Below are positions 16,634 to 59,341 of a stretch of 64,000 nt of DNA, one piece after another. Both the position numbers and the translations under genes were made by a program. How positions within the stretch are numbered: the first letter of the stretch is position 1; the number at the start of each line of letters is the position of its first letter. This DNA is from Bugula neritina (lineage: Eukaryota; Animalia; Bryozoa), in contig OZ037765.1 in NCBI GenBank assembly GCA_964035545.1, forward strand, positions 30,193,504 to 30,257,503. The letters are read 5' to 3'. Under the pieces are notes generated by a model that was given only the letters and a program-made list of their open reading frames with translations, had not been told where the DNA came from and ran no database searches.

Positions 16634-19911
<3,278 letters not shown>

Positions 19912-35945: not shown

Positions 35946-36501
35946 TGTGGTAGAGGAGCTGCTAATTGGTATAACATGTGCAGGGTTAACAGTGGACACG
36001 TGGTGTCAGAACACGATGTAGGGATACATCATGTGCCATGCATATTGACTGCATACACTAGCTCCAGTCATCACACTCGGGCACTTGACTCGTGAGGGAA
36101 ATCACATGCATACTGCCTCAGGTGCCATCTTTATCATATGGTCACCTTTGGTCACCTTTCACCGCTGTGGTCCTTCGCGGGTGGCGGGCCATCTTTTATC
36201 ATAATATTATGTCTATTTCTATTTGTTTATCTTTTACTGATATTCATTTATGAGACTTGATATTGATTGCTTGTGGCAAGTTGTATTATAAACAAATATT
36301 GTCTGGTTAAAAGTAAAAAAATAATAAATTAGAAAAAGTTATAGTAAATCACCTGTATGAGCCATAAGTATTTTACTAGTGGACATGAGGTTTAAGGAGA
36401 TAACTCCTTGTCACGCCTTCACTAATAAAGACCAAATTTTACCATAAATGCCAATGTTAATATAGTTTTTGTATTTGAAAATATGATTCAGGTATGTGAT
36501 G

Positions 36502-39500
36502 TTAGCCTGCAGACTCTAGATCTTTTGTCTTGGCAAGAAGACGATCGTATTTTACTTTGAGTACAACTATAATAGCAACAAGTATTACGAGTATAACTGT
36601 AGCCACACTGCCCACCATAAGTCCCACTGTAAGTGCTTCGCTCTTTTCACCTGCAGAAAAACAAAGTAAGAACATCTTCAAAATGCTTTACAATAATTAT
36701 CGTAGTTAAAAAATCCATGTTTAGTTGCACAGACATTAGAGGTTAGAGAAACAGCCTACACACAATACATATAACTGCCAATTAACTAAAATATTTTGAA
36801 AAATCACAGAATTAACCACTAGATTTTAACAGACAAATGAAAGATCTCGTACCTGTAGCACTAATAGGACTAATAACTCCAGATTTTGCTAATCCTGAGG
36901 TTCTAGGTAAACACATGAAGAAGCCAGGCATGTTGATGCAGTGATACGTGTTTTTGTCACACAAAGTTTCTAAGAACTTTGTGTTGTTACACTCGTTAAT
37001 ATCTAAACAGTCGTAGCCATTGCTACTCAACTCCCAGACGTCATCAGTATAACCCTGAGTTTGCCCAGTACCGTCAGCTTTGAAACAAGAGCATTGGAAT
37101 CCACTGAGAGTATCGGTACAGACATGAGCACAGCCGCCATTGTTGGTTAAACACTCATTCTTAGGACCACAATCAGTGTTATTCATTGTGATGGCTTCTC
37201 CACTTGTCAGGTGACAGGAACAGACGTACATATAGTCACTAGTCCATTCACATCTGCTTCCTATACAAACAGAATATAGCATGACATTTCTTACATAAAA
37301 ATGGAAATGGTTTGGCCCACATGAAGGAAGACAATTCCATTCTTCAAGTTAAATAATGTTCCAAGTTCATATTTTCCCTGGTGTTCTTCTGTTGACTAAT
37401 CAATTATTCTCAGCTTTTTAAGGTATGTGAATACTAATTTAATATTTCCAAAACACAATCCGTTGAAAGATTTTTTTAACCTAGTGCTTCTCCAAAACTT
37501 AACAGAAAAGCTTATATTGCATAATTCACATAGTTATAATATTACTATGTGGTCAATTGGCATATTTTACTTGAATAAACTTATATGTGATGGCTTAAAA
37601 CTTTTTGGAAAATAATTATTATCCATACCTTTATTGGTACAACTAGAAATCATGGGATGCGAAGATCTGGTCATTTCTTTATGAGTTGGGCATGAGCAGT
37701 AGTATCCACCAACTGTGTTCACACACTGGTCACTGCACTCGTGATTACTGCCTCGGCATTCATCGATATCAGCACAGCTCTTCCCATCATCCTTCAGCGC
37801 ATATCCTGGTCTGCAGAGGCAGATGTGACCACCGAGTCGGTTGTCACACAGATGCTCACATCCACCATTGTTAACCATACACTCATCTACATCCTCACAC
37901 GTCGTGCCATTAAATGGTGTAGCGTCACCATTTACTTTGCAGTAACACAGAGTTCCGTAGTAGAAGTAAGAATCGCAGTACAAAGTTCCAACTACAAGAG
38001 ATGTGTGCAATCGTGTTACTTAACATAAAACAATATAATATATGATGCTTTTACAACATGAGACATAATTTCTTAGAATCATAGTTTTGAGTGGTTAATG
38101 CTTGCTTCTGAAATAACTTAAAATTAGTTACATGAAAACCAACTTAGAAATTGTGTAGTGTTAGCTTACACAAGCAACATGGTTTAATGCAGCCTGTTGG
38201 TTATTAAAAAAAATAGTTGATACATTTAATAGGCAGTTTTTGCTACTAACATTAGATTAATTACAAATAAATTTTTAGAGACTAGTATAAGGTAGTAAAC
38301 TGCATTTACATATTATTTTGAGAGAAATTTTATCCACCAAGATAATATTTCATTACTGTCATATTATCTATTGTTAGATTAGGTTTTGAATCAAATGGTT
38401 TTACAATTTAAGCTTGAAAAAATCAGCTTTATAAACTAATTTATCGGTAGAAAATTTGTTCCACAGCATTGATTTGCTGAAATTGAGACTTTGTTTAAAG
38501 AACTGTGTTTTGCTGAAACCCATTTGAAAGGCGGCTGGAAAAAATTATTTGGCAAAGTCTTTATTCAACATACCATCACAATTAGTTGGAGATGGTGGTC
38601 TCAGTTTATATCCTTTCCTACAGGCACAATAGTAGCCTCCTAGAGTGTTGATGCAGACATCTGAACATCCGCCATTGTCAGTTAGACACTCATTTACATT
38701 GACTGCAAACTTTCCATCTTTTCCATCATCACCTGCATCTCCTTTCAATCCAGTATCTCCTTTTATGCCAACATCTCCACGTACACCTTTAGGACCGCTG
38801 TCTCCAACAGCTCCTTTGGCCCCAACATCGCCAATTGCACCTTTTTGTCCCAAATCTCCTTTTTGGCCCTGGCTTCCTTGTATGCCTTTGGCACCAACAG
38901 CACCTTCAGTGCCATTAAGACCTGGTGCCCCAGGAAGTCCTTTAACACCTGGAGAACCAACTAAGCCTTTAGCTCCAACTGCCCCCACTTCTCCTTTAGC
39001 TCCTGGAGATCCAACAGGTCCAATGCTACCAGCGTCTCCCTTAACTCCTGGGACGCCTCTTTCACCTGTTGCTCCAGTTGCACCTGCTTCCGCAGCTTCA
39101 CCATTCAGGCCTGGAAGTCCCTGATCTCCTTGAACGCCTTTAGTACCAGGTTCACCTTTAGCACCCACTATTCCTTGTTCACCAGGTAGACCATCTAGTC
39201 CAGGCTGCCCGGGTACACCAGGTGCACCTTTGACTCCAGGAGAACCTTGAGCACCTTTTGATCCGGTTAAGCCATCTATGCCTGGGATTCCAGGAAAACC
39301 TGGCAGTCCTTTACTACCTGCAACTCCTTTTGCACCAGTTGCACCAGTAGAGCCAATACCATCTCCACCAAATTCAAAACCAGCTGGTTCACCTTTTTGG
39401 CCAACTAGTCCTCTTTCTCCAGTTGCTCCCAGACCGCCAGGCAAGCCAGGCTGCCCAACATCTCCTTTTATTCCTTTAACACCAGGTGCACCCGGAGCAC

Positions 39501-42500
39501 CAATAGGGCCATCAAATCCTATTTCACCCTGAAGCCCAGATTCTCCAGGAGCACCAATTGCACCAGGAGCACCTGGCACACCTTGGTTTCCTTTAGGGCC
39601 AGTAGCACCCGGGCCACCAAATCCTCCACTTCCGGGCTCTCCCCTCTCTCCTTTCTCTCCAGGAGCACCAGGTAATCCTAAAATTAATATATTCAAAAAT
39701 TTGCAATTATAATGTGGATTTAATTTGACAGCAAAACATCACAATTTTATTTTCTAAATTAAAAACGTGTGTATTATATAGTGAAATATAATTAACAAAT
39801 TTGTAATTCCTAAAAATATTATGTAGCCATTTGAATGCTTGTTATTTTTATATAACCACTTATACGCTTACCTTGCTGGCCAGTACTACCAGTTTTACCA
39901 GGTGCACCACGTTCACCATCTTCGCCATTAAAACCAGGGAGTCCAATATCACCCTTGCTACCAGGAAATCCTCTCAGACCTGACACACCAGTGGCACCAA
40001 TAGACCCAGGACCGCCATCCCCTGGCAATCCTCTTAAGCCTCTTGGACCTGGCTCTCCTTTTGTCCCAGAGTTACCTGGTCTACCATTTCTTCCTTGAGG
40101 ACCAGTTGCACCAGGTACTCCAGGGGCACCAGGTAGGCCATTTGTACCCTGAACTCCTGATTCACCTTTGCGCCCTCGAAAGCCTCTTAATCCTGGTGAA
40201 CCAGTTGCACCTCTAACCCCAGTTGCACCTGTTCCCCCACCGGCTACCCCAGGGGCACCAGGCTCTCCTTTAAATCCAGGAAAACCACGGAGTCCATCAA
40301 ACCCAGGAAGTCCTGGTTCTCCTGCTTCTCCTTTAATACCCGGCAGCCCTGGTAAACCAATTGGTCCAGGAGCACCCTCTCGGCCTTCCCCTCTTTCTCC
40401 TTTATCACCTTTCAAACCATTTCGGCCAGTTGCACCAGTAGCACCCAATACTCCCTCAGAATATTTACCAGGCTCTCCTTTCAAACCAGGCCTTCCTGGA
40501 AACCCAGGCCGTCCAGTACGTCCAGATGCACCTGTTGCACCAGTTGCACCAGTTACACCATCAAAACTGTCGCCAGGTGCACCTGGGAATCCTTGCAAGC
40601 CAGTTGCTCCTATTAGACCTCTAGGACCAGTAGCACCAGTTGCTCCTATTTCACCATCACCACCATCACCAGGTTCTCCTTTTAATCCTGGAAACCCTCG
40701 TTCACCAGGTAGTCCAGGCAGCCCATTAGCCCCAGGAACTCCAGTAGCTCCAGTAGAGCCATCGAATCCAAATGCTCCAGAGTCACCTTTGAACCCACGC
40801 AAACCTGGTTGCCCAGGATTCCCTCTCAAACCAGGAATTCCTGGCTCGCCCTGCTTGCCAGGCAAGCCAGGCTCACCAGGAGCTCCATCTTTTCCTCGTT
40901 CTGTACCAGGTTCACCTTTCAATCCAATTAGCCCAGTAGCACCTGTGCTACCAAATTGTCCTGGCTGTCCAGGTTTTCCTGTGCTGCCAGTTGCTCCAAC
41001 TTCTCCATCAAGCCCAGGAAGACCGTCATCTCCTTTAATGCCTGGTAAGCCTCTCAAACCGATAGCTCCAGTTGCACCAATTTGACCAGGCTCTCCACTA
41101 AAACCTCGCTTTCCTTCTTTTCCAGTTGCTCCATCATCTCCTGGCCTACCAGGAAAGCCTTGAAATCCTGCATCGCCTTTTTCTCCGGGTAACCCAGGCT
41201 GACCATCAGATCCTGGTGTCCCTTGTAGCCCAGTAGCACCAGTGGCTCCATCATCACCCCAAACACCGCTTTCTCCTTTTTGCCCTTTGGAGCCAGTAGC
41301 ACCTGTTGCACCATCTTCTGCAACCCCAGTTGCTCCAACTTTTCCTGTTGCACCAACTCTTCCAGGAATGCCTGGAAAACCAATTTCACCCTTTTGACCA
41401 CGCAAACCGGGCAATCCTCTATACCCATCTCTACCTGCTCGTCCATCTCTCCCAGGTGCACCAACTGCTCCAGCAAAACCTTGAATTCCTCTTTCTCCTT
41501 TTTGGCCTACCCTACCTCTGGCACCTGGATACCCTTGACGACCAGGTTGACCAGGCTGACCAGTGGCACCAATTGTACCAGTACTTCCTCTTTGACCATC
41601 AATACCTGGTTGACCATAAGCACCCCGTTGACCAGGGCGACCAGGAAGACCATCAAATCCAGGACGTCCAACAGGACCTGTTGCACCTGGCTGACCAGGC
41701 TGTCCAGGTGCCCCAGTTATGCCTCTACTACCTGGAACGCCGTCTTGTCCAGGGGTTCCCTGCTCACCCTTAGATCCCCTCTGACCAGAAAGTCCAGGCT
41801 GCCCACGAACTCCAGGCCTGCCATTCTGGCCTGGTCTACCATCTCGGCCCGGATAGCCTTGTCTTCCTGTACTACCTCTGTCACCTGGTAAACCCCTTGA
41901 GCCAGGCCTACCATCACTGCCAGGCAAGCCATCCAAACCTCTATTACCAGAGATACCTCTATCACCTTGTCGACCAGGCTGTCCAGGTTGACCGGCTGCA
42001 CCTTTTAATCCAGGAGCACCAGTTGCACCTCTACTTCCATCTAAACCATCTTCTCCTTGTTGTCCTGGCTGACCATCTCTACCTGGTCTACCATCCGTTC
42101 CAGGAAAACCATCTCTACCTGGTGATCCTCTTTGCCCAGGTGAGCCCCTTTGACCAGTTCTTCCAGGTTGACCATCACGACCAGGTTCACCACGCTGACC
42201 TGGAGATCCAGGTTGACCACGCTGACCCGGTGAGCCTCGTTCTCCTTGTCTGCCAGGATAACCGTCTCTCCCATCATTTCCTTTTGTACCTTGTTGGCCT
42301 GGCTGTCCATCTCTTCCAGTTTCTCCTCTTCTTCCTGGTGAGCCTGGAGAGCCTCGCTGTCCAGCTTTCCCATCAAAGCCTAAAATATTCCACCAAAAAT
42401 TATGATTGTAATCAATTTATATATTATATAGTATGTATATGATGAAATAAAAAATTATTCTTCTAATTTTTGCTTGTGTAGACCATTCTATTGAGTTTAA

Positions 42501-45500
42501 TGTAAGCAATTCAAAGAAATCATTTGTCTAAAAGCCTACATCAATATGACAGCTACATGTATTACCACAAAGTTTATTAAAAAGCGTTATTTGTTGTTAG
42601 ATTCATTTACCAGATAATATGTAGGCATAACTAGGTGCAGTTTCTTCAGCACTTATTCATAAATGAGCAAAAGACTATTGAATGTCTAAAAAAAATATTT
42701 TTTTTAAAAAACGGTTTAGGATCCTACCATCAAGACCAGGCAACCCTGGAATTCCTTTTTGTCCAGGAGCACCATCTTGTCCATTGAGTCCATCTTTACC
42801 AGATGTCCCTTTTTCACCAGGTAAGCCACGTTGACCAGGAGAACCAGGTTGACCACGAATACCAGGAGAGCCATCTCTACCTCGTTCACCTGGTCTTCCA
42901 TCTCTGCCATCTTTACCTGGTAGTCCATCAGAACCAGGAAATCCTCTAGATCCATCTCTACCTGGCGAGCCAGAACTTCCTTTATTTCCTTGGGTACCAG
43001 GTCTGCCATCATTGCCATCTCTACCCGGTGCACCGATATTGCCTTTACTGCCATCTCTACCAGGAGCTCCGGGCAATCCTCTTGAACCAGGAAAGCCATC
43101 AAAACCATCACGGCCATCTGTTCCATCACGGCCATCTCTTCCTTTTAGACCAGGTACTCCAGCCTCTCCTTTTTGTCCTGCAGCACCATCTCTACCATCA
43201 CTTCCTCTTTCTCCAGGTTGTCCAGGTAAGCCACGTTCACCTGGTCTTCCATCTAAACCAGGTCTACCAGGGTCCCCAGAAGCTCCAGGAAATCCTCGTT
43301 CTCCTACTCTTCCTGGTGACCCATCTCTGCCAGGATTACCATCTCGCCCAGGATAACCATTTGAACCTTTTTGTCCATTTTGTCCATCTTGACCTTTTTG
43401 TCCAATTTCTCCTCGTTGACCAGGTAAACCTGGTAATCCCCTTTCTCCAGGATTACCATCACGACCACGTTCACCTGGTTGTCCAGCTTCTCCTTCTACA
43501 CCAGGCAAACCAGGAGCTCCTCGAATGCCTGGCTGACCTGAAGGTCCAGGTTGACCTGTTTCTCCTTTCCTTCCAGGTAATCCATCTTTTCCAGACAAAC
43601 CTGGTTGCCCAGGACTGCCCCTATTACCAGGGTTACCATCTCTACCCCTTTGACCAGGTTGTCCATCATTTCCAGGTATACCAGATGGGCCAGGTTCACC
43701 AACACTGCCATCAAACCCATCCCTACCATCATTTCCTGGAAAACCCTGATCTCCTTTTTGTCCAGACTGACCTTCAGCACCTTTATTACCTGGCAATCCA
43801 GGTTTGCCATCTATTCCATCTAAACCTGGATAACCATCTCTTCCTTGTTCACCATCATTTCCCCGTTCACCCTTTTCTCCTGGTAAACCATCATTACCAT
43901 CTTTTCCATCAAACCCATCTTTGCCATCTCTACCACTCTGTCCATCTCTACCATTTTGTCCAGGAGTCCCACGTTGGCCGGGCTCTCCTCTTCTACCAGG
44001 TTCACCATCCTGGCCATCTTGTCCTCTACTACCAGGTAGTCCGGGTTGTCCTCTGATACCTTGCTCACCAGGTAAACCTGGCTGTCCATCAAGTCCTGGT
44101 ACCCCACGATCTCCTTTGTTGCCGGATGCTCCTTTCAAACCATCTTTGCCAGAAAATCCATCTTGACCATCACGTCCTGGTTGCCCAGGTCTTCCATCAA
44201 AACCCTTTCGCCCATCTATACCATCTCTTCCAGGCTGACCTGGTTGACCATCACGACCACTCCTGCCATCTTTACCTGGTGAGCCTTTAGCGCCAGGTTG
44301 CCCATCTCGACCTGCTTCACCTTTGTCTCCTTTGTCACCAGGTAAGCCTGGAATACCATCAGCCCCATCATTTCCTCGATCTCCACGAGCACCTACAAAG
44401 AATAACTTTGGATAATCTTTGGATGAAAATTATTAAATTATCTTAACAAAAAATTTATCTTCGGTTTTCAAAAATAAATTTAAGAATTGAAGATAGCATA
44501 ACATCTAAAATTTTTAACGCTATTAGTAACTAGAAGCTTGATATTTTGCAAATCTCAAATATAATGTTATATGAATTATAAAAATAACTTTTGCATTTTA
44601 CAAACCTAAACTGATTAAAAAAAGTATAATTTATACTATCATAATGTATTCATAATTTATAAACTGTTATAGTCAGCACACTTTTAATTACTTTAGCTAT
44701 GACATTTAGTAATACACCTCAAGCTTTTTAATATATTAAAAAGTACTAAGTATCAGAAGGTTCTGAATATTTAGCTTATAATTTATTGTGGCGTAGAAAG
44801 CTAAAATTTAAGGTTTAGTTACCATAAATTCCTACCTGGTGTGCCATCTCGGCCTGGTTCTCCATCTTTTCCAGCTTTCCCATCAAATCCATCCACACCA
44901 CTTAATCCATATCTACCTGGTGCCCCTGGTTCACCACGCTCTCCCTTTGCACCATCCTGTCCATTTTGACCTGGTGCTCCAGGTTGACCATCAGCACCCC
45001 GATCTCCAGGTCTACCATCTTGTCCGTCTCTACCAGGATTACCCGGTCTACCATCTTGTCCTCTATCACCATCTCTCCCTGGATTACCATCTCGCCCTGG
45101 ATTTCCGGCATTTCCTTTTTCACCTGGTTGACCGAGTTGTCCTGGACTTCCTCTTTCACCAGGTCTCCCAGGATATCCATCTCTACCGTTGGAACCCTTT
45201 GCACCTATGGGTATTTCACAATAGTAATAATTCTAACAGAAACTCTAATAATGATACAAATAAGGTATACATTTCCTAATTAAAAGTTATTTATAAAATA
45301 TATTTTATGTAAAACACAAACTTTCTTGCAGCTGGTTTTTGCAACTAGTAAAAGCTAGTAGTTAGACAGGAATTTGTAGTGTTGAGTCTACCCAGTGGTC
45401 CTTGTGGTGTAACGGTTAGAGCAACTGCTTGCAAATCAGAAGTTTCAGGTTTGAATCCCAGTGGGAGCAAAATTATTTGATAGAATTAATGACAAAATCG

Positions 45501-48500
45501 AATATAATCTTATATAATATGGTCTCACAGCCTGTACTGTTTTAAGTGAATTTCATTAGGAATATCAATAGATCAGTTAACAAGTGTTTAGCTACAGATT
45601 AGTATGCCTTACCTGGTGTGCCATCTCGGCCTGGTTCTCCATCTTTTCCAGCTTTACCATCAAATCCATCCACACCACTCAATCCATATCTACCTGGTGC
45701 GCCTGGTTCACCGCGTTCTCCCTTTGCACCATCACTGCCATCTAAACCTGGCACTCCAGGTTGACCATCAGCACCTCGATCTCCAGGTCTTCCATCTTGT
45801 CCATCTCTACCAGGATTACCCGGTCTACCATCTTGTCCTCTGTCACCATCTCTTCCTGGATTGCCATCTCTTCCCGAAGCTCCCTTTGTACCTGCTTCAC
45901 CTTTTTCTCCTCTTGCACCTGGTTGCCCATTGCTTCCTCTTGTACCAGGAGAGCCATCTCTTCCACGGTAACCATCTCTACCTGGAAGACCAGGTGTGCC
46001 TTTCTCCCCTGGCTCACCCTGTTCTCCCGGCAGACCTGGTAGGCCATTTATACCGTCTTTGCCTTTACTGCCAGGTTGTCCTGGTTGTCCAGGTCGTCCG
46101 ACACTTCCATCTTGACCTTGAACACCACGCTGTCCATCATTGCCATTTCTTCCAGGCAAACCTGGAGCTCCTTTCTCTCCGGGAGCACCTCTTTCACCTT
46201 AAAGTTAAATGTGCACATGTCAATAATCAGTTTTGAAGTCAATAGCTGTTGCTTATAGTATATAGTAGGAATTCTCAGTTGAAAATGCATAATGTATTGA
46301 CATACAAAAGTTGCTATTTAGCAATTGATATTAGATTATAAGTGGATCATAAGTTTTAGGAATAGTGTTGATTTGTACAAAGCAATATAATTACTTTGAC
46401 TGCAATGATTAAGAGATTATCAAACAAAATATTTGACTTATTTTATAATAAAAGCATGCAAACTTCTGTTTAATAATATGATTCATCTCAAAAATTCAAG
46501 CTTTCAATGCCTATTTCATGTTGGCCATGTGTTAAACATAAATCAGCATGAAATAGTTTTCATTTCAACAATATTATTTTTTGTATTACATTTATTACAT
46601 ATATAACATTATATTCATTACATATATATTATGTTCATTATATTATGTATATATTATATGTAGCATTATGTTATACATTAACTTATATAATAATACATTG
46701 CAGTACATTATGTTCTACTATATTGCAGAATAAACTAAGAAAAATATTAGGTCACCTGGTCTGCCATCTGCTCCATCACGACCACGAGTACCAGGTTCTC
46801 CATCTTTTCCAGCTTTCCCATCAAATCCATCCACACCACTCAATCCATATCTACCAGGTGCGCCTGGCTCACCACGCTCTCCCTTTGCACCATCCTGTCC
46901 ATCTTGACCTGGCGCTCCAGGTTGACCATCAGCACCTCGATCTCCAGGTCTTCCATCTTGTCCGTCTCTACCAGGATTACCCGGTGCACCATCTTGTCCT
47001 CTATCACCATCTCTTCCAGGATTACCGTCTCTTCCTGTAGCTCCAACATCTCCTTTTTCACCTGGTTGTCCTGGTTGTCCAAGTTCACCCCTTTCACCTG
47101 GTCTACCTGGTGAGCCCTTCATTCCTGGATACCCATCTTGACCATCTCGGCCTGGGTTACCAGGTCTACCTTGTAATCCATCATTGCCAGTTTGTCCATC
47201 AGAACCATTTTCTCCTGGTAAGCCATCTTGACCAGGCTCTCCCTGTGCACCCTTGCTACCTGACTGCCCTACAAATTATTATTAAGATTAAACATGATCA
47301 CACATTTTCTCAATCTTTAAACATTGCCTAATATAGCTTAATGGTTTAGTTTGGATTACATAAACACAAACACGAACACAACGTACATATCTAGTTTTCA
47401 TGATACTTAATGAACTGTTACAAGGCAGATATACATATATAAGGCTTTTACAAACCTTTGGCACCAGGTTGTCCATCTTTTCCAGCTGCGCCAGGAATAC
47501 CTGGTTGACCAATGCTTCCTTTATCTCCATCCCTGCCATCTACTCCATGTCGCCCTCTTTCACCTGGCCTACCATCAGTGCCACGCTCTCCTTTGACACC
47601 TGGTAATCCTGGTTCTCCAGGATACCCCACTGTGCCTTGTGCACCAGGTATTCCATCTTTTCCAGGTGTACCTTGATTACCTTTAGCTCCTGGTGCGCCA
47701 TCATTACCATCTCTGCCTGGGTTACCTTGCTGGCCTTTCTCACCTGGGCGTCCAGGACTCCCAGGGAGTCCTTGGTCACCACGCTCTCCAACTTTTCCAT
47801 CAAAACCAGGTGGCCCTGTTAAACCAGGGAACCCATCTTTTCCAGGCTGTCCATCTTTTCCATCTTGTCCATCCAATCCATCTTGTCCATTTCTTCCATC
47901 TCTACCTGGTGCCCCTGGTTCACCGCGCTCTCCTTTAGCACCATCCTGTCCATTTTGACCTCGAGCTCCAGGTTGACCATCGACACCCCGATCTCCAGGT
48001 CTTCCATCTTGTCCATCCCTACCAGGATTACCCGGTCTACCATCTTGTCCTCTATCACCATCTCTTCCAGGATTACCATTTCGACCAGAAGTACCAATAG
48101 CTCCTTTTTCGCCAGGTTGTCCTGATTCACCAGGCAGTCCTCTTTCTCCAGGAATACCAGGCAAACCTTCTTGACCATTTTCTCCATCCTGCCCATCTCT
48201 TCCAGGAGAACCTTGCTCTCCTTTCGTTCCTGGCTGTCCTACTGAACCTGGAATTCCATCTTGTCCTGGACTCCCATCATGTCCTCTGATGCCAGGTTGG
48301 CCAGGCCTACCAGGAGAGCCATCAGTTCCTTTTGTCCCTGGGGCACCTTGTTGTCCAGGTTCTCCTCTTTCTCCTCTGCTTCCAGCTCTACCTGGTTGAC
48401 CATCTTTACCATCAAAACCTCGAGGGCCAGCTTGCCCAGGATAACCTTTTTCGCCTGGTTTGCCATCTTGGCCTGGCAAGCCCGGTTCTCCAGGTAATCC

Positions 48501-51500
48501 GTCTTGCCCATCGTAGCCATCTTTACCTGAAATACCAGCTTCGCCTGGCTGTCCAGGTTCTCCACGAAGTCCAGGAGAGCCCATTGTACCTGGGCTACCG
48601 CGATTACCATCTCTACCCGGAATTCCATCAGTTCCTCTATCACCTTTACTTCCTTTGTCACCATTCTCACCTTTTCTGCCATCATCCCCTGGTAATCCAT
48701 CTCGCCCATCTTGTCCATCATATCCATCTTGACCATCACGACCAGGTGCTCCAGGTCTTCCTAAATTTCCCTGTCTCCCTGGCTCTCCGTTTTTGCCATC
48801 GACTCCATCTCGACCCGGGAGTCCATTAGCCCCTTTTTCTCCTTTTGTTCCCACTCTACCTGGTTGCCCAGCCTCTCCAGGAGTTCCTGCTTCTCCAGGT
48901 TGCCCACGGGCACCAGGATTTCCATCTTCGCCATCCAATCCTCTATATCCTGGTATACCATCTGCACCTCTGTCTCCTGGACGTCCGGGTATACCTGGAA
49001 CACCCGGAGCTCCACCATCGCCCTTTTCTCCTTTTACTCCATCTTGGCCAGCTCGCCCATTAAAGCCATCAACTCCATCTAATCCAGGTCTTCCAAAGGA
49101 ACCAGGGCTTCTTTGATCTCCTTTTTGTCCATCTTTACCTGGTAACCCTGGTGAGCCCCTTTCTCCTGGTTGACCATCTCGACCTTGTTCACCCGGTCTG
49201 CCATCATACCCCGGTCTTCCAGGCTGACCTGGTTGACCTCTATTGCCATCTCTGCCAGGATTACCATCCTGACCCCTTTGGCCAGGTTGACCAGGAGTGC
49301 CACGATCTCCTCGTCTGCCTGGTGATCCAGCTCTACCTGGTTGTCCATCTCTACCATCGTATCCATCTCTCCCAGGATTTCCTGAGCTCCCATCTCTTCC
49401 CGGTGAGCCTCGATTTCCAGGTGTTCCTGGTGACCCCCTTTCTCCAGGTCTGCCATCTGAACCATCTTTACCATCATATCCATTGACTCCTGGAGCCCCT
49501 TGCTCTCCTGGCCTTCCCGCGTCTCCTTTAGAACCTGTAAGAATATACAAGTATAAAGTAAGTTAACAAAGTTAAGACGAATATTGATATAAAGTAAGTA
49601 CAGTTTAATTTACATGTAAAGTAATTTTAATGTCAAAAGATTATTATGCAGCATGATATCATCTTAACAAACCTTTCCCTCCAGCTTGTCCTGAAAGCCC
49701 ATCGGATCCTGGCGGTCCTTGAGAGCCAGGCAATCCCGACTCCCCAGGTTGCCCTTCTTGTCCCATAGCTCCCTTTTCTCCAGCATCTCCTTTGGCACCC
49801 TTTGCACCTCCATCACCTTTTTGACCAGGAAGTCCTGGTTGACCAGCTTGACCAGGAGTTCCAGGTGATCCTGTTGGACCCGTAGCCCCAATGTTATGAG
49901 CTGTAAATCAAAAAAGTTACAAGACATGTTGTACAAAAAAACTGGCAAATCCTGTGGGTTTTGGTTCAAGGTCAAATTATCAATAGATATGCACTTGTAC
50001 AACAATAATTTTTAACAATTTAAAAAGTAGAAAAAATAAAAAGGAGTTGCCTTCTCAAACTTGAACACCTAGCATAGACAACATCAGTTCTATTACTCAT
50101 GCCCTAAACACATTAGATTTTAATCCACAATTTTTCCAAGAAAATATTTTTTCGGTGCCTGCATTTTGCACTGTCCAACTGTTCAAGAAAAATTTGCCAA
50201 CATTGCAATAATTATTGGGTTGATTTGTGGTTACAACATTAATGTTTTGCTTTTTACTTTCCACTTTTCAATTTCCACTTTTTACAGTCAAAACCATATT
50301 CTAAAATCTAGTTCAAAGAAACAGTTGGAAATTAGTATGATGACATTCTTACAATAGTCACAGGCATAGCCATAGTAGCACATCAGCTGATTATCTTCTT
50401 CACCCGTCTTCTCATTGATGATAACTAGAAATGAAAAAGATGACAGTGTATTCATAAATCTTAGGCTAAAGAATAAATTTAGACCGAATACAAATCCGAA
50501 CTCTCATACATGCAAATTGACTGCTCGAGATTCTGTAAGATATGTTAGGGATTTTATGCTTACCTCAATTATACAACAATATATGCCTATAGTTATATAT
50601 ACTGGCAAATACAAATTACTGTCATTGATATGCTTCACTTATTTTTGTATATCAAGATTTAGTGGGTTAATCAAGTACAGGCTAAATAAAATGAATGTAG
50701 CACAGCTATTTGGACATAGATATTTTGGAGTTGTCCACTTTTGTGATAAAAGCATGTAGAAATTTTAGATGAGTTTGTATTATATTTGTAGATGGTGATT
50801 TTACTAACCTGGGTCTATGACAGCTCCTATTGAGTAAAGTACCCTCTCACCATCCCTGCCCCTGGCAACTCTCTGCTCCCCAACCACTGGGCGAGCATTT
50901 CCTAACACAGGAATTATCTTCTCTTTAGACGTATCATAAGATATATCAGATGTAAATGGTATGACAGGTCCCGAAGTGCTAAACCCCAAGTAATAAGAAT
51001 CTCTGATATTTGGTCTATCCAGAACTGGTACCTAAAGTAAGTCATTTTAAAAAGTTAATAATATATTTGTTACTGGAGCTCTAAAATGTGTAGTTTTCTT
51101 TCTTATTTAAAAACTAAAAAAATCTAAGCTATCTAAAGCTTTTCACCACTATAGCTTTACTAGAATAAATATGTTATAAAAGCTAATTGATATTATACAG
51201 GATATAGTAGTATAGGCTACTTCAGATCTGACTGTAAGTAGGGAGCACAACTCTTAAGAACTACAAAGGAACAGTTTTATTCTGATGGCTAAAGATGATG
51301 GGAGATTTATGTTAATTAATTTTTTTGCAGTTTATTTGTTGAATAATGCAAAAGACTAGTTGATGTAATATTATAAGCACACAGCCCAGACAGTGAAGTC
51401 AACAACAACTTAAACCTACCACAGTTGTACAAATTCAACACATGCTTTTCAAATATTCAATCAACCACATATATTGCCATTTGGTTTATAATGCAAATGT

Positions 51501-54500: not shown

Positions 54501-57500
54501 TAGTAATGAGACCTAACATTTAACAGCGTATTGTAAGTGCCAACCCCACTCCTAGCAACCCAAAATCTCTTAAAGCATACAATTGTATTCACCAATTTAG
54601 CAACTATCCTCCAAGATATTTGCAAGCCTCATTGCAAGTTGTAACTATATATGTATGCAGTAAAGTAAAGTAAAATCTCCTTGCTATCAGTTTCCATGGC
54701 GATGAACAATTACAATCTAATTTTATACAGATGTAATATGATAATATTGTTGAAACTCTGCCAAAGTTGAAATCTGGACAGATTATAATTATCTACTCTT
54801 ACAGGAATGAGGTCAGCAACAAAAGTATACCAGACCGGACAAATCTAAAGCTCCCTAATCTGCTATACAACTCTATTGTTTGAAAAAGAACAATCCATAA
54901 CCCAGAGAGCTTCTATAGAAACCTTGGAATGCACTCAACTATTCCGAGGTTAACCTTGACCAACATTTATTTTTTATGGAAAATTTTTCGTCATCTCATT
55001 TTGAGGCGTAGGCACTTTGTCAATCGTACCGAACATTTTTAAAGCAATTTGATAAAGTGAACGAATGATACATGTATATATGTAATAGTATTTACATAAT
55101 TTCACCAACATTAATTAATAGAGAAGTTGAATCCCTTCATAGAGAGGACAACTCTAAAACTTACTGTGTAGACACCAGACTGTGATCCCGTGGTGTGCTC
55201 TAATTCGTACTTCAGTACAATAGAGCTGTTGAGTAGCTGATTTGTTGAACCTTTAAAGTCCTGATATCGTAACTCCCACAGCTGAAAGTTAATAGTCTGA
55301 GGTCTGTTTACCCCGTAGGGATTGTCAATATAATATTGAAAGGCATGCAGGACCCCAGGACGCAGACGTATGCCCAGGTCTATGTATGACCTAGCTCTGT
55401 CTTTTGTCACTGTAGACTGTGATCTTACTGTTATGTTGTGACCAGCAAACAACGTCCCTATCGGCACTTCCCATTTCAAATCTGCAAAATAGGGTAAGAA
55501 ACATTGTAATGCATGTATACCAACTCTTTTACTTTTTAATAAACAGGATTAATAGCTGAGGTGATGTTCATGGTAAGTTATTAAATTCCTGAATTATAGT
55601 AATAAATTAATTAAGGTCTTTATTCTATACCTACAGTGGCAAATATGAATAATGTAACCGTAGTATCTAATAGCAGCTAGCCATTTTCAATCAATAAGAA
55701 CTAAATCAAAGGAAAGAAGTAAAATATTACACACATGCCTACAGTTTCTGATAACATATAAACAAAACTGTCATCTGTCAACATGTTTCAGTGCACAGCA
55801 TAAAAATACAGTAAAGAGAGATTCATTATTATTAGTTAGAGAAACTGACAAGTCAAATTACACCAGGTCTCAGTGGTATATACATAGTAAGCCTACAAGA
55901 TAACATTTTAAAACCACACACTAGTATAATACAAACATTATATGTGACCTTAATGCATTAGCTACGCTTCAGATATCCCTAATTAAATATCCATGCAACA
56001 GTAACTTAGGAAATAATCTATAATAATAATGATGAGCAGAATTATACTCAAAAATTAACTTTATCTTTTGATTCAAACCAATCCATGCTTTACCAGTTCT
56101 CACAGATCTAACAAAATAATTAATTCACATCTAATAGAGATTTGGCTACTTTCAGCTCTCACGTTTCAAACCGGCATTGAAGTACAATGTAATGTTTGAG
56201 AAATCTGGTTAAAATATTAAAAGTAGGCTCACTGTATTTTTATCATTTGAAATTTAAATAAACCACAACTGTTCTTTTTTACAAGCTGTGTTTACCCTTG
56301 ACTAAGTTCTGGTAAAGAAGATTAAGTAATCTATAGGAAAGAGTACATTGGTACCAATGCTGCCTCGTATATGTCAAAAAACTTTCGAAGAAAATATTAA
56401 TATAGGCCTACTATAATGAACACTTAGCTTCATCTAAAAGCTATTAAGCTGTAGACTTTTGCTAAATAATCTAGTTACTAGCCATGATGGTCTTTAAATG
56501 TCCCTTCTGGTGTTCTCTTATATATATAGCACATAATCTTTAATGCATGAACAAGATTGTTAATACTAACCACTTCTCAACTCAACTCTAATTCTACCAT
56601 CACAAAAAGTAAAAAAATTTCACAAAGCAAAATAAAATGTTGTGTCTCTCACTTTTCATTTAAAATCTGGTTATTTCAATATGCTGTATTTCTTGTGAGA
56701 AATAAAAGCGAATAGACATTTAGTGGTAGTTCCCATATAAAAGGTTGCTTTCTAATTATTAGGAAAAAAGTGAGCACCTATGATGAAACAACCCAGTCAA
56801 GTTTGCATTTAGGCACATAGAAAAGTGAAAAAGGAAGCAGAGTTGATGCTATCTGCGAAAGAAATTCAAAGGTAAGCTTAAGAACTGGTAATTTGCATCT
56901 GTAGATGCCGTCATAGATGTTGAGAAATAAAATTCATATCATCATAACAACTACTATTGTGCTCGTGGCAATTGTAATGCAATTTATAAAAAATAAAGTG
57001 ATATATTATGACTTCCAACAATCTAAGCACTTCCACATTATAAAAATAGTCAAACTACAAGGAAAAAGTTTGATAAAGGAATTTTAAACAAAAATGTAAT
57101 TTAAATGACTCATTAAAAAGATAAGAATATTGTAATGTATGTAAATTGGTTTTTTTCTTAACTTTAAATTATTCTCTTTAATTGTTTAATTGAAATAGTT
57201 GACAAAGTGTTAATTGCAGTTTCTATGACCAAAATAAAATAAAAGCAGCTGTAACATCTGGTAGTTTTTTAAATCCAGCGAAACGTACCAATTAGTGCCA
57301 ACATTTAGTAACTCAGGTGTAAACCTGGTCACAATTTTGGAAGCTGATGTGTAGACTGTGATTTATGAAGACAGGTAGGCTTGTGGCCAGTGAGCCGATA
57401 AATATTATTCAACTAATTTCAAAAGAAATATAACAAATATGATCAACTTTTCCTATTTTCCCTGGGAGCTAATATTTTCATAAGAGATAAGCCTATAGTA

Positions 57501-59341
57501 TTATACGTAAAAATGAGAGAGTTATGATGGACAACTGGTTTAGCTAAAGAATTATTGAGATTAACAGGCTGTTCAGAACTTCACTTTTATTAAACCTTCT
57601 CATCAGGTTGTTTGTTTGTTATATTCTTTTTTAAAAAGGGCAAGGCGGTATATAGATATAGTGAACTTAGAACACAGCAGAAGCAAAAGCAGAGCTTGAA
57701 AAATAGTGGAACAAGTTTTAAAAAGCTTGAAATCTGAAAAATTAGCCTATCTTATAACGGTCATATCTATTCCTTCAGAAGTTAGCAGTTTAATTATTAT
57801 GATCATACAGGTTATTTAGATTTTTAAGCAATGACATATGAAAACATGAAAATTGATAAACTTATAAATACATTTATAACCTCTAAGAAGGTTTAAATAA
57901 AATTTTTAATCATTTGATTTTCACTTGGTTTCTGTAGGTACTTCCTTTACCTGAAACAGCATGTCGTCTGCAGAACTTCTTGAAATTTTTACTCAAAAAG
58001 ACTTTGTAAATTTTTTACTACTTGACTAACTCACTAGTTGACTGTTGCATAGAAATGAACTTTTGCAGCTTAATTAAAGAACCTTCTAAGCTTACTGGCA
58101 AGTAAGGGAAAGACAAGACAACTCTAAAACTTATGTCCAACTGCATTTAGAGCTTCTACATCTCTTGCTTACATGAATAATAACTTTCAGCAATAAATAT
58201 AAGAGAAACCTGCTATAAAGTCACCCTAGACTTGGTTTCAGACGTCACTAAACATTTACAGAGGATTATATGGTGGATCCTCATCTAGGAAACTTACAAC
58301 ATTTACCTCAAGAGTGCAAGCACTGACACTAAGTAGTCTACTTACATCATCACAACGGTCAATCTGCTTACATATAAACACAAATATTGCTATATGGTCA
58401 AAAGAAAACATTTGAAGCTCTGGCTAAGCACATTTCTGTTAACTTTCAATAGATGGCAACTTCACTTTAAGCAAATTGATTACAAAATTGGAGTCATTAT
58501 ATTATTTAAAAAGAAACCTTTACACTTTTGTGGGCTAACTTTTTAAATTCCATTACAGTCAATTTACTTTGCAGTTATATTTGATGCATGTAGCTGCATA
58601 AATCTTTCATCGGTTTCTACTTGGTGTAGTTGCAGTACTGACTTAGTATAGATATATCTATGCCCTATGGTGACACATCAAACATATAACAGGCATATTG
58701 AAGCATTGCTCATATTGTCACTAAGTTTTATGGTTTTTGATTTTGACATTTATAATTAATTTCTGCCAAAATTAGACAGCTCTACTAAACAGCTTTCTAA
58801 AAAATTGGCAAAAAGTGTTATAAACGAAATAATAATTTAATCTACTAAAAAAAGCATTTTATATCTGACAGCATACATGCATAGGATTTAACATGCGTCA
58901 TCAATATATTATGCAAAACATTCTGCTTCGTCACGATAGTCACAGGCAGCATTTCTATGAGGTAATTTAGCAAGTTTTGTAGTGATGGGCTGTTGGGAGA
59001 TCCTACCAAACAAAGCACCTGCTCCCTCTGGTGATGTCACGCAGGGCATTAGTTCAAATTTCCATTTAAAAAACTTATAAGTCAATGTGGTCAAAATGTT
59101 TTGAGACGATTTCATATTTAGTTAAATATGAAAACTTTACCACCCGGGATCCCACACATCTAGGACTGTGAACACATTTGACAGCTATCAACAAAATTTA
59201 GACTACCATCTATTGTAAAACAAAGTAATTCAAATATAAACTTAAACAAAGCAAAATTAATATAAAGTTTTACTTACCCGGTTGAATAAGTGCAAGTGAA
59301 AGTGCAAGGAGAGTATATCCACAGAGTATTCTCTGCCACAT
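36502..59341 (-). CDS. Giant type-I transmembrane collagen-like protein with cbEGF repeats, ~3,524 aa, 14 coding exons
   Basis: Exons 59278-59341 (signal peptide [21 protein letters not shown]), 55165-55481 and 50809-51031 (N-domain), 49673-49900, 47456-49534, 46756-47268, 45613-46197, 44836-45204, 42728-44392, 39872-42379, 38574-39677 (Gly-X-Y plus first EGF), 37629-37991 and 36853-37260 (EGFs, D.DEC/NEC motifs), 36502-36650 ([27 protein letters not shown], then [18 protein letters not shown]). All GT-AG, sum 10,575 nt, open throughout. The 5'-most exon link is the least certain. Confidence 0.88.
44836..48120 (-). repeat. Four near-identical ~230-290-bp coding duplicates within the collagen gene
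   Basis: Module G(R)[37 protein letters not shown]...[14 protein letters not shown] at ~44836-45125, ~45613-45880, ~46790-47060 and ~47895-48120, with high nucleotide identity by eye. Confidence 0.9.
45397..45469 (+). pseudogene. tRNA-like pseudogene or SINE head (Cys GCA-like) in a collagen intron
   Basis: GTGGTGTAACGG A-box, GGTTTGAATCCC degenerate B-box, CTG-c-TTGCAAA-t-CAG anticodon arm; acceptor and T stems imperfect. Confidence 0.55.
51727..52192. mobile_element. PIF/Harbinger-like MITE, 466 bp, containing a (TGCAA)n microsatellite
   Basis: TIRs AGTTGCGTTTATACCT and AGGTATAAAGGCAACT (1 mismatch), flanked by TCA and TAA (TNA/TAA-type 3-bp target). (CAATG)n run at ~52093-52125. Confidence 0.78.

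What the first reader, a model, noticed from the sequence alone, without database searches (positions are those of the whole stretch)
36502..59341. Giant type-I membrane-anchored collagen: signal peptide, novel N-domain, ~2,970-aa triple helix, cbEGFs, C-terminal TM
Seen: a single open spliced frame of ~3,524 aa with N-terminal signal peptide, ~990 Gly-X-Y triplets, EGF cluster, ~25-residue hydrophobic helix followed by basic residues, and an 18-aa tail. There is no COLFI, type IV NC1 or C1q trimerisation domain. Established: fibrillar helices are ~1,014 aa, and the characterised transmembrane collagens (XIII, XVII, XXIII, XXV) are type II with an N-terminal TM. Inference: this is an inverted-topology surface collagen projecting a rod of about 0.85 micrometre (at ~0.29 nm per residue), tipped by a globular head. 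It could be a cell-to-cuticle/matrix tether or the membrane-bound precursor of a giant shed cuticle-type collagen, recalling the micrometre-long annelid cuticle collagens. I recognise no named collagen class with this architecture.
Basis: partly seen in the sequence, partly recalled or inferred. Interest (0 to 1): 0.9.

Follow-up and report, generated by a model that had tools for sequence, protein, structure and literature searches.

The report
Giant membrane-anchored bryozoan EGF-collagen gene
The moss animal Bugula neritina has a real, transcribed gene for a collagen chain about three times as long as tendon collagen; it starts with a signal peptide and an unknown head domain and ends in EGF modules and a membrane anchor, a layout I found described for no collagen.

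Summary
On the minus strand, 59341 to 36502, 14 exons with canonical GT..AG introns and consistent phases give a 10,575-nt reading frame of 3,524 aa.

- **Layout:** signal-peptide exon, a two-exon cysteine-free N-domain of about 180 aa with no Pfam or PDB match, a 2,969-aa collagen span with 978 Gly-X-Y triplets, and about five EGF-type modules. The first EGF lies in the same exon as the end of the helix. A 25-residue transmembrane helix and an 18-aa basic tail follow.
- **Transcript evidence:** RNA-derived contigs from four studies show the four 3' introns (C7/C8, C8/EGF, EGF/EGF, EGF/TM) spliced exactly as predicted.
- **Weak point:** the 5' joins rest on splice logic and on three paralogues with the same exon plan. 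No RNA evidence covers them.
- **Organism:** the genome is Bugula neritina (chromosome lengths match tzBugNeri2.1).
- **Family:** exactly three genes. One is a convergent neighbour 36 kb away whose five central collagen exons have identical lengths. The other, on chromosome 2, is threonine-rich. This scan had already noted both on other DNA.
- **Closest published class:** the Lingula "EGF collagens", which are much shorter and have no membrane anchor reported.

Function is inferred only: a type I surface collagen, or the membrane-bound precursor of a giant matrix or cuticle collagen.

The parts
59278..59341 (-). Exon 1: start codon and a 21-aa signal peptide (n-region MWQR, hydrophobic core, S-L-A / Q-P-G cleavage-type end), ending in phase 1 before GTAAGT
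   Evidence: Both paralogues have an equivalent short signal-peptide exon with a phase-1 donor (GTAAGT or GTGAGT). No RNA evidence for the join.
55165..55481 (-). Exon 2: first part of the N-domain (105 full codons), cysteine-free, with two conserved N-glycosylation sequons (N-I-T and N-x-S/T)
   Evidence: No Pfam hit. About 13 real exon-level homologues among 1.8 billion representatives. AlphaFold of this exon alone gave pLDDT 63, all beta.
50809..51031 (-). Exon 3: second part of the N-domain (74 codons), ending in the conserved E-R-V-x-Y-S-x-G-A-V-x-D-P motif four residues before the first Gly-X-Y
   Evidence: Conserved in both paralogues at 53% and 39% identity. No Pfam hit.
49673..49900 (-). 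Collagen exon C1 (24 triplets)
47456..49534 (-). Collagen exon C2 (2,079 nt, 230 triplets, one 3-residue break)
   Evidence: Same length as exon C2 of the neighbouring paralogue.
46756..47268 (-). Collagen exon C3 (513 nt, 57 triplets)
45613..46197 (-). Collagen exon C4 (585 nt, 65 triplets)
44836..45204 (-). Collagen exon C5 (369 nt, 41 triplets)
42728..44392 (-). Collagen exon C6 (1,665 nt, 185 triplets)
   Evidence: RNA contigs that cover C7 run on about 1.5 kb further 5' (records 3, 7 and 16).
39872..42379 (-). Collagen exon C7 (2,508 nt, 274 triplets, eight breaks of 1-2 residues)
   Evidence: Fully covered by RNA contigs with no insertions or deletions.
38574..39677 (-). Exon C8: the last 102 triplets of the helix and the first calcium-binding EGF in one uninterrupted exon
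   Evidence: Intron 39678-39871 is spliced out in RNA contigs of 4 runs.
37629..37991 (-). Exon G2: a 4-Cys aromatic-rich module (G-T-L-Y-C...Y-Y-G-T-L-C-Y-C) plus two cbEGFs
   Evidence: Pfam FXa_inhibition 63.7 bits and EGF_CA 54 bits. Joints 37991/38574 and 37259/37628. The module occurs in only three genes of the genome.
36853..37260 (-). Exon G3: a second 4-Cys module, one EGF, one truncated cbEGF and the start of the stalk
   Evidence: Pfam hits fall below cut-off. Spliced in RNA.
36502..36650 (-). Last coding exon: stalk, 25-residue transmembrane helix, 18-aa K/R-rich tail, stop TAA at 36504-36502
   Evidence: Joint 36648/36851 in 4 runs. One 1,254-nt RNA contig spans TM-G3-G2-C8 (record 1). 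The two listed differences in this exon are synonymous.
36450..36501 (-). Start of the 3' UTR, collinear with the genome in RNA contigs that run on past 36450
   Evidence: records 1, 10, 15

Best explanation
**Shown.** This is one transcribed 14-exon gene on Bugula neritina chromosome 1. It encodes a 3,524-aa chain: signal peptide, an unknown glycosylatable beta-rich head of about 180 aa, a 2,969-aa collagen domain and about five EGF-type modules. The first EGF is fused to the helix end within one exon. A short stalk, one transmembrane helix and an 18-aa basic tail follow.

**Inferred.**
- The chain inserts as a type I membrane protein, with the N-terminus outside.
- Three chains held in the same membrane register through the disulphide-rich EGF cluster next to the membrane. 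Anchor plus EGF cluster would then replace the missing C-propeptide or NC1 domain.
- The helix zips from the membrane outwards. It is stabilised by hydroxylation of the prolines that fill a third of the Y positions.
- The product would be a rod of about 0.85 micrometre carrying a trimeric head at its far end.
- It either stays on the cell as a surface collagen or is cut in the stalk and laid down in an extracellular matrix or cuticle layer.
- The convergent neighbour gene, whose central helix exons have exactly the same lengths, may supply a partner chain.
For: - **Gene model:** canonical sites, consistent phases, no stops, 3,524 aa.
- **Collagen-EGF link:** the helix end and the first EGF share one exon.
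- **RNA:** contigs from four studies show the C7/C8, C8/G2, G2/G3 and G3/TM introns removed. Contigs chain TM-EGF-EGF-C8 and EGF-C8-C7-upstream.
- **Selection:** 29 of 38 listed coding differences are synonymous, and none hits a Gly or a Cys.
- **Helix composition:** 978 triplets, Pro at 321/978 Y positions and 17/978 X positions.
- **Topology:** K/R residues follow the TM, and an acidic stalk precedes it.
- **Secreted head:** two conserved N-glycosylation sequons in the N-domain.
- **No known trimerisation domain:** no COLFI, C4 or C1q hit.
- **Paralogues:** two more genes share the same plan, including short phase-1 signal-peptide exons and conserved E2 and E3.
- **Length constraint:** exons C2-C6 are 2,079, 513, 585, 369 and 1,665 nt in this gene and in the neighbour, at only 25-57% non-Gly identity. 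G-A-T-G-A-T-G motifs sit at matching helix positions within 2 residues.
Against: - No RNA evidence covers the E1-E2, E2-E3 and E3-C1 joins. Reads were laid on the 3' end, and a junction search in metagenome contigs gave only chance hits.
- Topology, trimerisation, folding direction, shedding and location are all inferred. No predictor was run on the joined protein, and there are no protein data.
- This gene has eight short helix breaks in C7 where the neighbour has none. That does not fit a simple in-register heterotrimer.
- The N-domain abuts the helix directly, so it could equally be the nucleation site.
- Contigs cannot exclude a minor secreted isoform without the TM exon.
Confidence: 0.65

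Rival explanations
1. Same gene, but the membrane-bound form is only a short-lived precursor. The ectodomain is cut in the juxtamembrane stalk, and the micrometre-long rods are built into a cuticle-type or other fibrous matrix. This would parallel annelid giant cuticle collagens, which have a very long helix and a terminal globule, and nematode cuticle collagens, which are released from a membrane anchor.
For: - The helix length and terminal head recall annelid cuticle collagens as summarised in PMC11766948.
- The chromosome-2 paralogue is Gly-X-Thr rich, the hallmark reported for Riftia cuticle collagen (PMC11766948).
- The cytoplasmic tails of the three paralogues are short and not conserved, as expected for a mere anchor.
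- There is a cysteine-free stalk of about 25 residues before the TM.
Against: - No furin-type or other recognisable cleavage motif lies in the stalk.
- The one R-x-x-R in the N-domain is not conserved in the paralogues.
- No protein or localisation data exist, and no annelid gene sequence was available for comparison.
Confidence: 0.3
2. The 5' part is mis-joined. The signal-peptide exon at 59341, or the N-domain exons, belong to another transcript, and the collagen gene has a different or missing N-terminus.
For: - No RNA evidence was obtained for these three joins.
- The introns here are long (3.8 and 4.1 kb), against about 0.7 kb in the neighbouring paralogue.
Against: - Phases fit exactly (1, 0, 1) with strong donor and acceptor sites.
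- E2 starts in phase 1 at the same residue in all homologues, so it needs a short upstream exon.
- E2 and E3 are followed by collagen exons in all three paralogues, each with its own short phase-1 signal-peptide exon.
- No other ORF or Pfam domain lies between 50,000 and 64,000.
Confidence: 0.07
3. It is a collagen-stalked surface receptor of the scavenger-receptor or collectin kind, with the unknown N-domain as ligand-binding head, rather than a structural collagen.
For: - The lollipop layout of head plus collagen stalk plus membrane anchor.
- A Y-D-R-L (YxxPhi-type) motif in the tail.
- A head domain conserved across paralogues and species.
Against: - A 2,969-aa stalk is an order of magnitude longer than in any receptor of that kind (my knowledge).
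- The tail motif is absent from both paralogues.
- Exact conservation of exon lengths points to a length or assembly constraint typical of structural collagens.
Confidence: 0.1

Closest known systems
Lingula anatina shell-matrix 'EGF collagens' (Luo et al. 2015, PMC4595640)
   Same: Lophophorate animal. Signal peptide plus collagen triple-helix repeats plus EGF/EGF_CA/FXa_inhibition modules instead of a COLFI domain. Tandemly duplicated genes.
   Different: The Lingula proteins are 774-1,548 aa and alanine-rich. No transmembrane segment or N-domain of this kind is reported. Sequence homology to the Bugula genes could not be tested here.
Type II transmembrane collagens (MACITs XIII/XXIII/XXV, collagen XVII; PMC4678570)
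   Same: Collagens that are integral membrane proteins with a large collagenous ectodomain. They can be shed.
   Different: Those have an N-terminal cytosolic domain and a signal-anchor (type II), with short interrupted helices and no EGF. Here there is a cleavable-type signal peptide, and the TM is at the C-terminus.
Annelid giant cuticle collagens (Gaill et al. 1995 and Mann et al. 1996, as summarised in PMC11766948)
   Same: A very long triple helix with a globular end domain. Threonine-rich Y positions in Riftia resemble the chromosome-2 paralogue.
   Different: They are known as proteins 1.5-2.5 micrometres long (my recollection of the primary papers).
Fibrillar collagens (types I-III, V, XI)
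   Same: A long, largely uninterrupted Gly-X-Y helix with Pro (Hyp) in Y.
   Different: There is no COLFI C-propeptide and no TSPN or VWC N-propeptide. The helix is 2.9 times longer. Introns split the Gly codon (phase 1), and Pro is nearly absent from X.
CCBE1 and streptococcal Scl1/Scl2 (analogues recalled from my own knowledge)
   Same: CCBE1 combines cbEGF and collagen repeats. Scl proteins have the same order: signal peptide, globular head, collagen rod, C-terminal cell anchor.
   Different: CCBE1 is secreted, has its EGFs N-terminal and only short collagen repeats. Scl proteins are bacterial, wall-anchored through LPXTG, with helices under 100 nm. Neither is a relative.

Membership tests
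Collagen superfamily (Pfam PF01391) | Long uninterrupted runs of Gly-X-Y | tested here: met
   978 triplets over 2,969 aa. PF01391 E=2.4e-47 on exon C8 alone.
Fibrillar collagens | C-terminal COLFI propeptide | tested here: not met
   No COLFI hit in any non-collagen exon at E<=1. The reading frame ends at the TM exon, and the RNA runs on into the 3' UTR.
Fibrillar collagens | Major helix of about 1,014 residues | tested here: not met
   2,969 residues.
Type IV / type VIII-X / C1q-type collagens | C4 (NC1) or C1q trimerisation domain | tested here: not met
   No PF01413 or PF00386 hit.
Type II transmembrane collagens (MACIT, XVII) | N-terminal cytosolic domain and signal-anchor TM, with the collagen C-terminal to it | tested here: not met
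   The N-terminus is a 21-aa signal-peptide exon. The only other long hydrophobic segment is 18 aa from the C-terminus.
Lingula-type EGF collagens | Signal peptide plus collagen repeats plus EGF-type domains, no COLFI | tested here: met
   compared with PMC4595640. This is met at the level of domain content only.
Lingula-type EGF collagens | Sequence homology (common origin) with the Lingula genes | not tested
   The protein searches available were limited by length and returned no Lingula protein. The N-domain found no annotated protein of any phylum.
Annelid cuticle collagens | Micrometre-long helix with a terminal globule, located in the cuticle | not testable with these tools
   The length and head fit the sequence. 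Location and protein data are lacking.
Calcium-binding EGF modules | Six-Cys EGF with a D/N-x-D/N-E/Q-C calcium-binding start | tested here: met
   EGF_CA and FXa_inhibition score above cut-off in C8 and G2. The motifs N-V-N-E-C, D-V-D-E-C and D-I-D-E-C were read.
Type I membrane protein | Cleavable signal peptide, single C-terminal TM, positive-inside tail | tested here: inconclusive
   All the sequence features are present. No predictor was run on the joined protein, and there is no experiment.

The most novel reading that the evidence does not exclude
The three Bugula genes are the first gene-level view of giant cuticle-type collagens of spiralian animals. They would be made as type I membrane-anchored chains in which the membrane anchor plus a disulphide-rich EGF cluster replaces the C-propeptide as the chain-registration device. 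The convergent gene pair on chromosome 1, with central helix exons of identical length, would supply the two chain types of one 0.85-micrometre heterotrimer that is then shed into the matrix.
Probability: 0.2. Interest if true: 0.8.

Novelty: new variant of a known kind. Interest (0 to 1): 0.65.

Why it matters
- **Topology:** every membrane collagen characterised so far is a type II protein. Long collagens are thought to need a dedicated trimerisation domain (COLFI, NC1, C1q or a coiled coil).
- **Chain registration:** a 2,969-residue helix that ends in EGF modules and a C-terminal anchor would show a different way to select and register chains.
- **Folding problem:** how is a triple helix three times the usual length folded without errors?
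- **Cuticle collagens:** these are candidate genes for the micrometre-long collagens known biochemically from worm cuticles.
- **Length conservation:** exon lengths are conserved exactly between two paralogues that differ at most non-glycine positions, which gives a testable handle on length control.
- **Unknown head:** the head domain appears restricted to this lineage, so its fold and partner remain to be found.

Tried and rejected
- **C2 region search:** a homologue search with the start of exon C2, meant to catch spliced 5' fragments, returned only compositional collagen XXI-type hits.
- **E2 frame search:** the open frame around E2 found only one genomic allele (P0001).
- **Collagen/EGF junction search:** returned phage and bacterial collagen-like proteins, checked.
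- **E1/E2 junction 20-mer in metagenome contigs:** nine hits. The eight I read have unrelated flanks, so they are chance. The ninth is a contig labelled human gut metagenome, which I left unread.
- **N-domain fold:** AlphaFold of exon 2 alone gave pLDDT 63. There was no Foldseek PDB match, only TM-scores at or below 0.51 in the ESM Atlas, nothing by language-model features and no PDB sequence match.
- **Spurious hits:** two long hits in the representative search (P0005, P0010) are tandem-repeat junk.
- **Literature:** no described type I membrane collagen turned up.
- **L005:** this Logan contig is an 88%-identical genomic copy that stops short of exon 1.
- **Left out as instructed:** There is therefore no SignalP or TMHMM-type run on the whole chain, no fold of the complete N-domain (E2+E3) and no full-length homologue search.
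Full report
**Where we are.** The window is G000:C1:30193504-30257503 of a 216,009,554-base genome in 321 sequences, with C1 at 35,640,107 bases and C2 at 33,575,671. These figures match the published Bugula neritina assembly tzBugNeri2.1: 216.00 Mb, 320 scaffolds plus the mitochondrion, chromosome 1 at 35.64 Mb and chromosome 2 at 33.58 Mb (PMC11480708). The organism is therefore the bryozoan Bugula neritina. This is an inference from matching sizes. It fits the "symbiont metagenome" and biofilm RNA runs that hold the sequence.

**The observation.**
- Six-frame reading of the minus strand shows eight long open stretches with Gly at every third residue between 49907 and 38548. Cys-rich and hydrophobic open stretches lie downstream.
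- Reading the nucleotides at every boundary gives 14 exons. All have AG acceptors and GT donors.
- Every collagen exon begins and ends in phase 1, inside a Gly codon.
- The phases of the 5' exons fit. E1 ends in phase 1. E2 starts in phase 1 and ends in phase 0. E3 starts in phase 0 and ends in phase 1. C1 starts in phase 1.
- The exons sum to 10,575 nt, or 3,524 codons plus the stop, with no internal stop.
- The collagen span is 2,969 aa with 978 triplets. At 0.286 nm per residue that is about 0.85 micrometre.
- From the single 3-residue break in C2 to the first break in C7 there are about 1,950 residues without any interruption. Twelve of the 13 breaks lie in the C-terminal third.
- Pro occupies 321/978 Y positions but only 17/978 X positions. 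Asp occupies 192 Y positions.

**The ends of the protein.**
- Exon 1 encodes M-W-Q-R followed by a hydrophobic core and a small-residue end, then G|GTAAGT.
- The last exon encodes an acidic stalk, 25 hydrophobic residues, then K-V-K-Y-D-R... and the stop at 36504-36502. Together these are the sequence features of a type I membrane protein.
- Between helix and anchor lie one cbEGF in the same exon as the helix end, then two exons. Each of these starts with an unusual 4-Cys, aromatic-rich module followed by EGF or cbEGF modules.
- Pfam EGF_CA, FXa_inhibition and cEGF score above cut-off in C8 and G2 and below cut-off in G3.
- No COLFI, C4 or C1q domain is found.

**Transcript evidence.**
- Many RNA-type runs of "organism A" and of a symbiont metagenome hold part of the 3' stretch.
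- I laid the contigs of four runs from four studies on 36450-42449. They show exactly four intron joints, at 39676/39871, 37991/38574, 37259/37628 and 36648/36851. All are CT..AC on the plus strand, which is GT..AG for this gene. Within the stated cut ambiguity they are my predicted boundaries.
- One 1,254-nt contig spans TM-G3-G2 and 100 nt of C8.
- A 5,344-nt contig starts with 29 nt joined across the G2/C8 joint and runs through C8 and C7 into upstream sequence. The TM and EGF exons are therefore part of the collagen transcript.
- No insertions or deletions relative to the window were reported, so the short helix breaks in C7 are real.
- The contigs differ from the window at about 4% of bases, and the same differences occur in all four studies.
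- Of the 40 differences listed, 2 lie in the UTR, 29 are synonymous and 9 are not. None changes a Gly or a Cys. That is purifying selection in my frame, TM exon included.

**The 5' end is the weak point.**
- Reads were laid on the 3' end.
- Searches for spliced protein fragments found none. A junction 20-mer gave only chance hits in metagenome contigs.
- Support therefore comes from splice logic and comparison. E2 begins at the same residue (x-W-E/T-I/V-P) in all homologous exons, and in phase 1, so it needs a short upstream exon.
- E3 is conserved in both paralogues up to the motif just before the helix.
- Both paralogues have their own 16-21-aa signal-peptide exon with a phase-1 donor, GTAAGT in the neighbour and GTGAGT in the chromosome-2 gene.
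- Nothing else codes between 50,000 and 64,000.

**The family.**
- In the whole genome the N-domain exons E2 and E3 occur three times. So does the first part of G2, which carries the G-T-L-Y-C...Y-Y-G-T-L-C-Y-C module.
- The second copy lies 36 kb away on the plus strand, convergent with this gene and ending at about window position 274.
- The third copy is on chromosome 2. Its helix is longer and Gly-X-Thr rich.
- All three copies have the same order of parts.
- Between this gene and its neighbour, exons C2-C6 have identical lengths (2,079, 513, 585, 369 and 1,665 nt), although only 25-57% of non-Gly residues are identical.
- In the C-terminal quarter, G-A-T-G-A-T-G motifs fall at the same cumulative helix positions within 2 residues: 2275/2275, 2354/2356, 2392/2392, 2424/2425 and 2459/2461.
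- This is a strong length or register constraint. It is compatible with co-assembly of the two chains, but this gene has eight short breaks in C7 where the neighbour has none. I leave heterotrimer formation as a hypothesis.
- A small tree of the E2 exons places unnamed exon-level homologues from other samples with each paralogue, so the duplication predates those species.

**The N-domain.**
- It has no Pfam match and no PDB sequence match.
- It found about 13 real hits, all exon-sized open frames from unannotated contigs, among 1.84 billion representatives. No annotated protein of any phylum was hit.
- It is cysteine-free and carries two conserved N-glycosylation sequons, which fits an extracellular domain.
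- Exon 2 alone folds as beta strands with low confidence and matches no known fold.

**Comparison with what is known.**
- Membrane collagens described so far are type II (PMC4678570).
- Collagens with EGF domains instead of COLFI were described as a new group in the brachiopod Lingula (PMC4595640). Those listed are 774-1,548 aa with a signal peptide, and no membrane anchor is mentioned.
- Annelid cuticle collagens share the very long helix and globular end, and in Riftia the threonine-rich Y positions (PMC11766948). I could not compare sequences.
- My literature searches found no described type I membrane collagen.
- This scan had already noted the two paralogues on other DNA (s1-487143, s1-472082) and another pair of membrane-tethered giant collagens (s1-456733). 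I treated these as leads. My own reproduce the shared architecture.

**Mechanism.**
- Shown: the gene structure, its transcription and 3' splicing, the domain content and the selection acting on it.
- Inferred: type I insertion; trimer registration by the anchor plus EGF cluster in place of a C-propeptide; folding from the membrane outwards; a 0.85-micrometre rod with a distal head.
- Also inferred: it is either a stable surface collagen or a shed precursor of a matrix or cuticle collagen.
- The non-conserved short tails and the extreme, length-conserved helix argue for a structural role and against a signalling receptor.

I did not build or search the joined spliced protein. I did not read the one metagenome hit labelled as human gut.

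Noticed in passing
G000:C1:30179302-30193778 (plus strand; L006 + L008; ends near window position 274): A convergent paralogue 36 kb away with the same exon plan. Collagen exons C2-C6 have exactly the same lengths as here, at only 25-57% non-Gly identity. Its C7 exon has no helix breaks, while this gene has eight.
   Followed up: partly
G000:C2:~13477700-13498100 (L007, L009, L010): A third family member with the same N-domain, EGF modules and C-terminal TM. Its helix is longer (about 4,000 aa by summed open frames), proline-poor, and dominated by G-N-T, G-A-T and G-S-T triplets.
   Followed up: partly
window 39872-41300 and 38574-39677 (C-terminal third of the helix): The G-A/S-T-G-A/S-T-G motif recurs, at spacings of 15-90 residues in this gene and about every 36 residues in the neighbour, where it follows K-G-E-S-G. 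Most of the short helix breaks of this gene lie one or two triplets upstream of such a motif.
   Followed up: partly
window 46756-46900, 45613-45760, 44836-44980 (3' ends of C3, C4, C5): The three exons end in nearly the same 30-35-residue sequence (…[16 protein letters not shown]…), and C7 begins with a related F-D-G-K-A-G. This looks like an old internal exon duplication.
   Followed up: no
window 36450-42449 versus the RNA contigs; L005 versus window 54660-58914: RNA contigs from four separate studies share the same differences from the reference (about 4%). A Logan genomic contig is only 88% identical across intron and E2. This suggests a divergent haplotype or a cryptic sibling lineage of B. 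neritina.
   Followed up: no
window 16634-17401 (+) and 24291-24761 (-): A 255-aa open frame made of leucine-rich repeats (LRR_8, E=5.5e-19) and an exon of an OATP-family organic anion transporter (PF03137, E=1.1e-11) lie between the two collagen genes.
   Followed up: no
P0005, P0010: Two long hits to the N-domain exon are translated tandem repeats from metagenome contigs, with odd Pfam scores and zero matched stretches. They are false positives of the representative search.
   Followed up: yes
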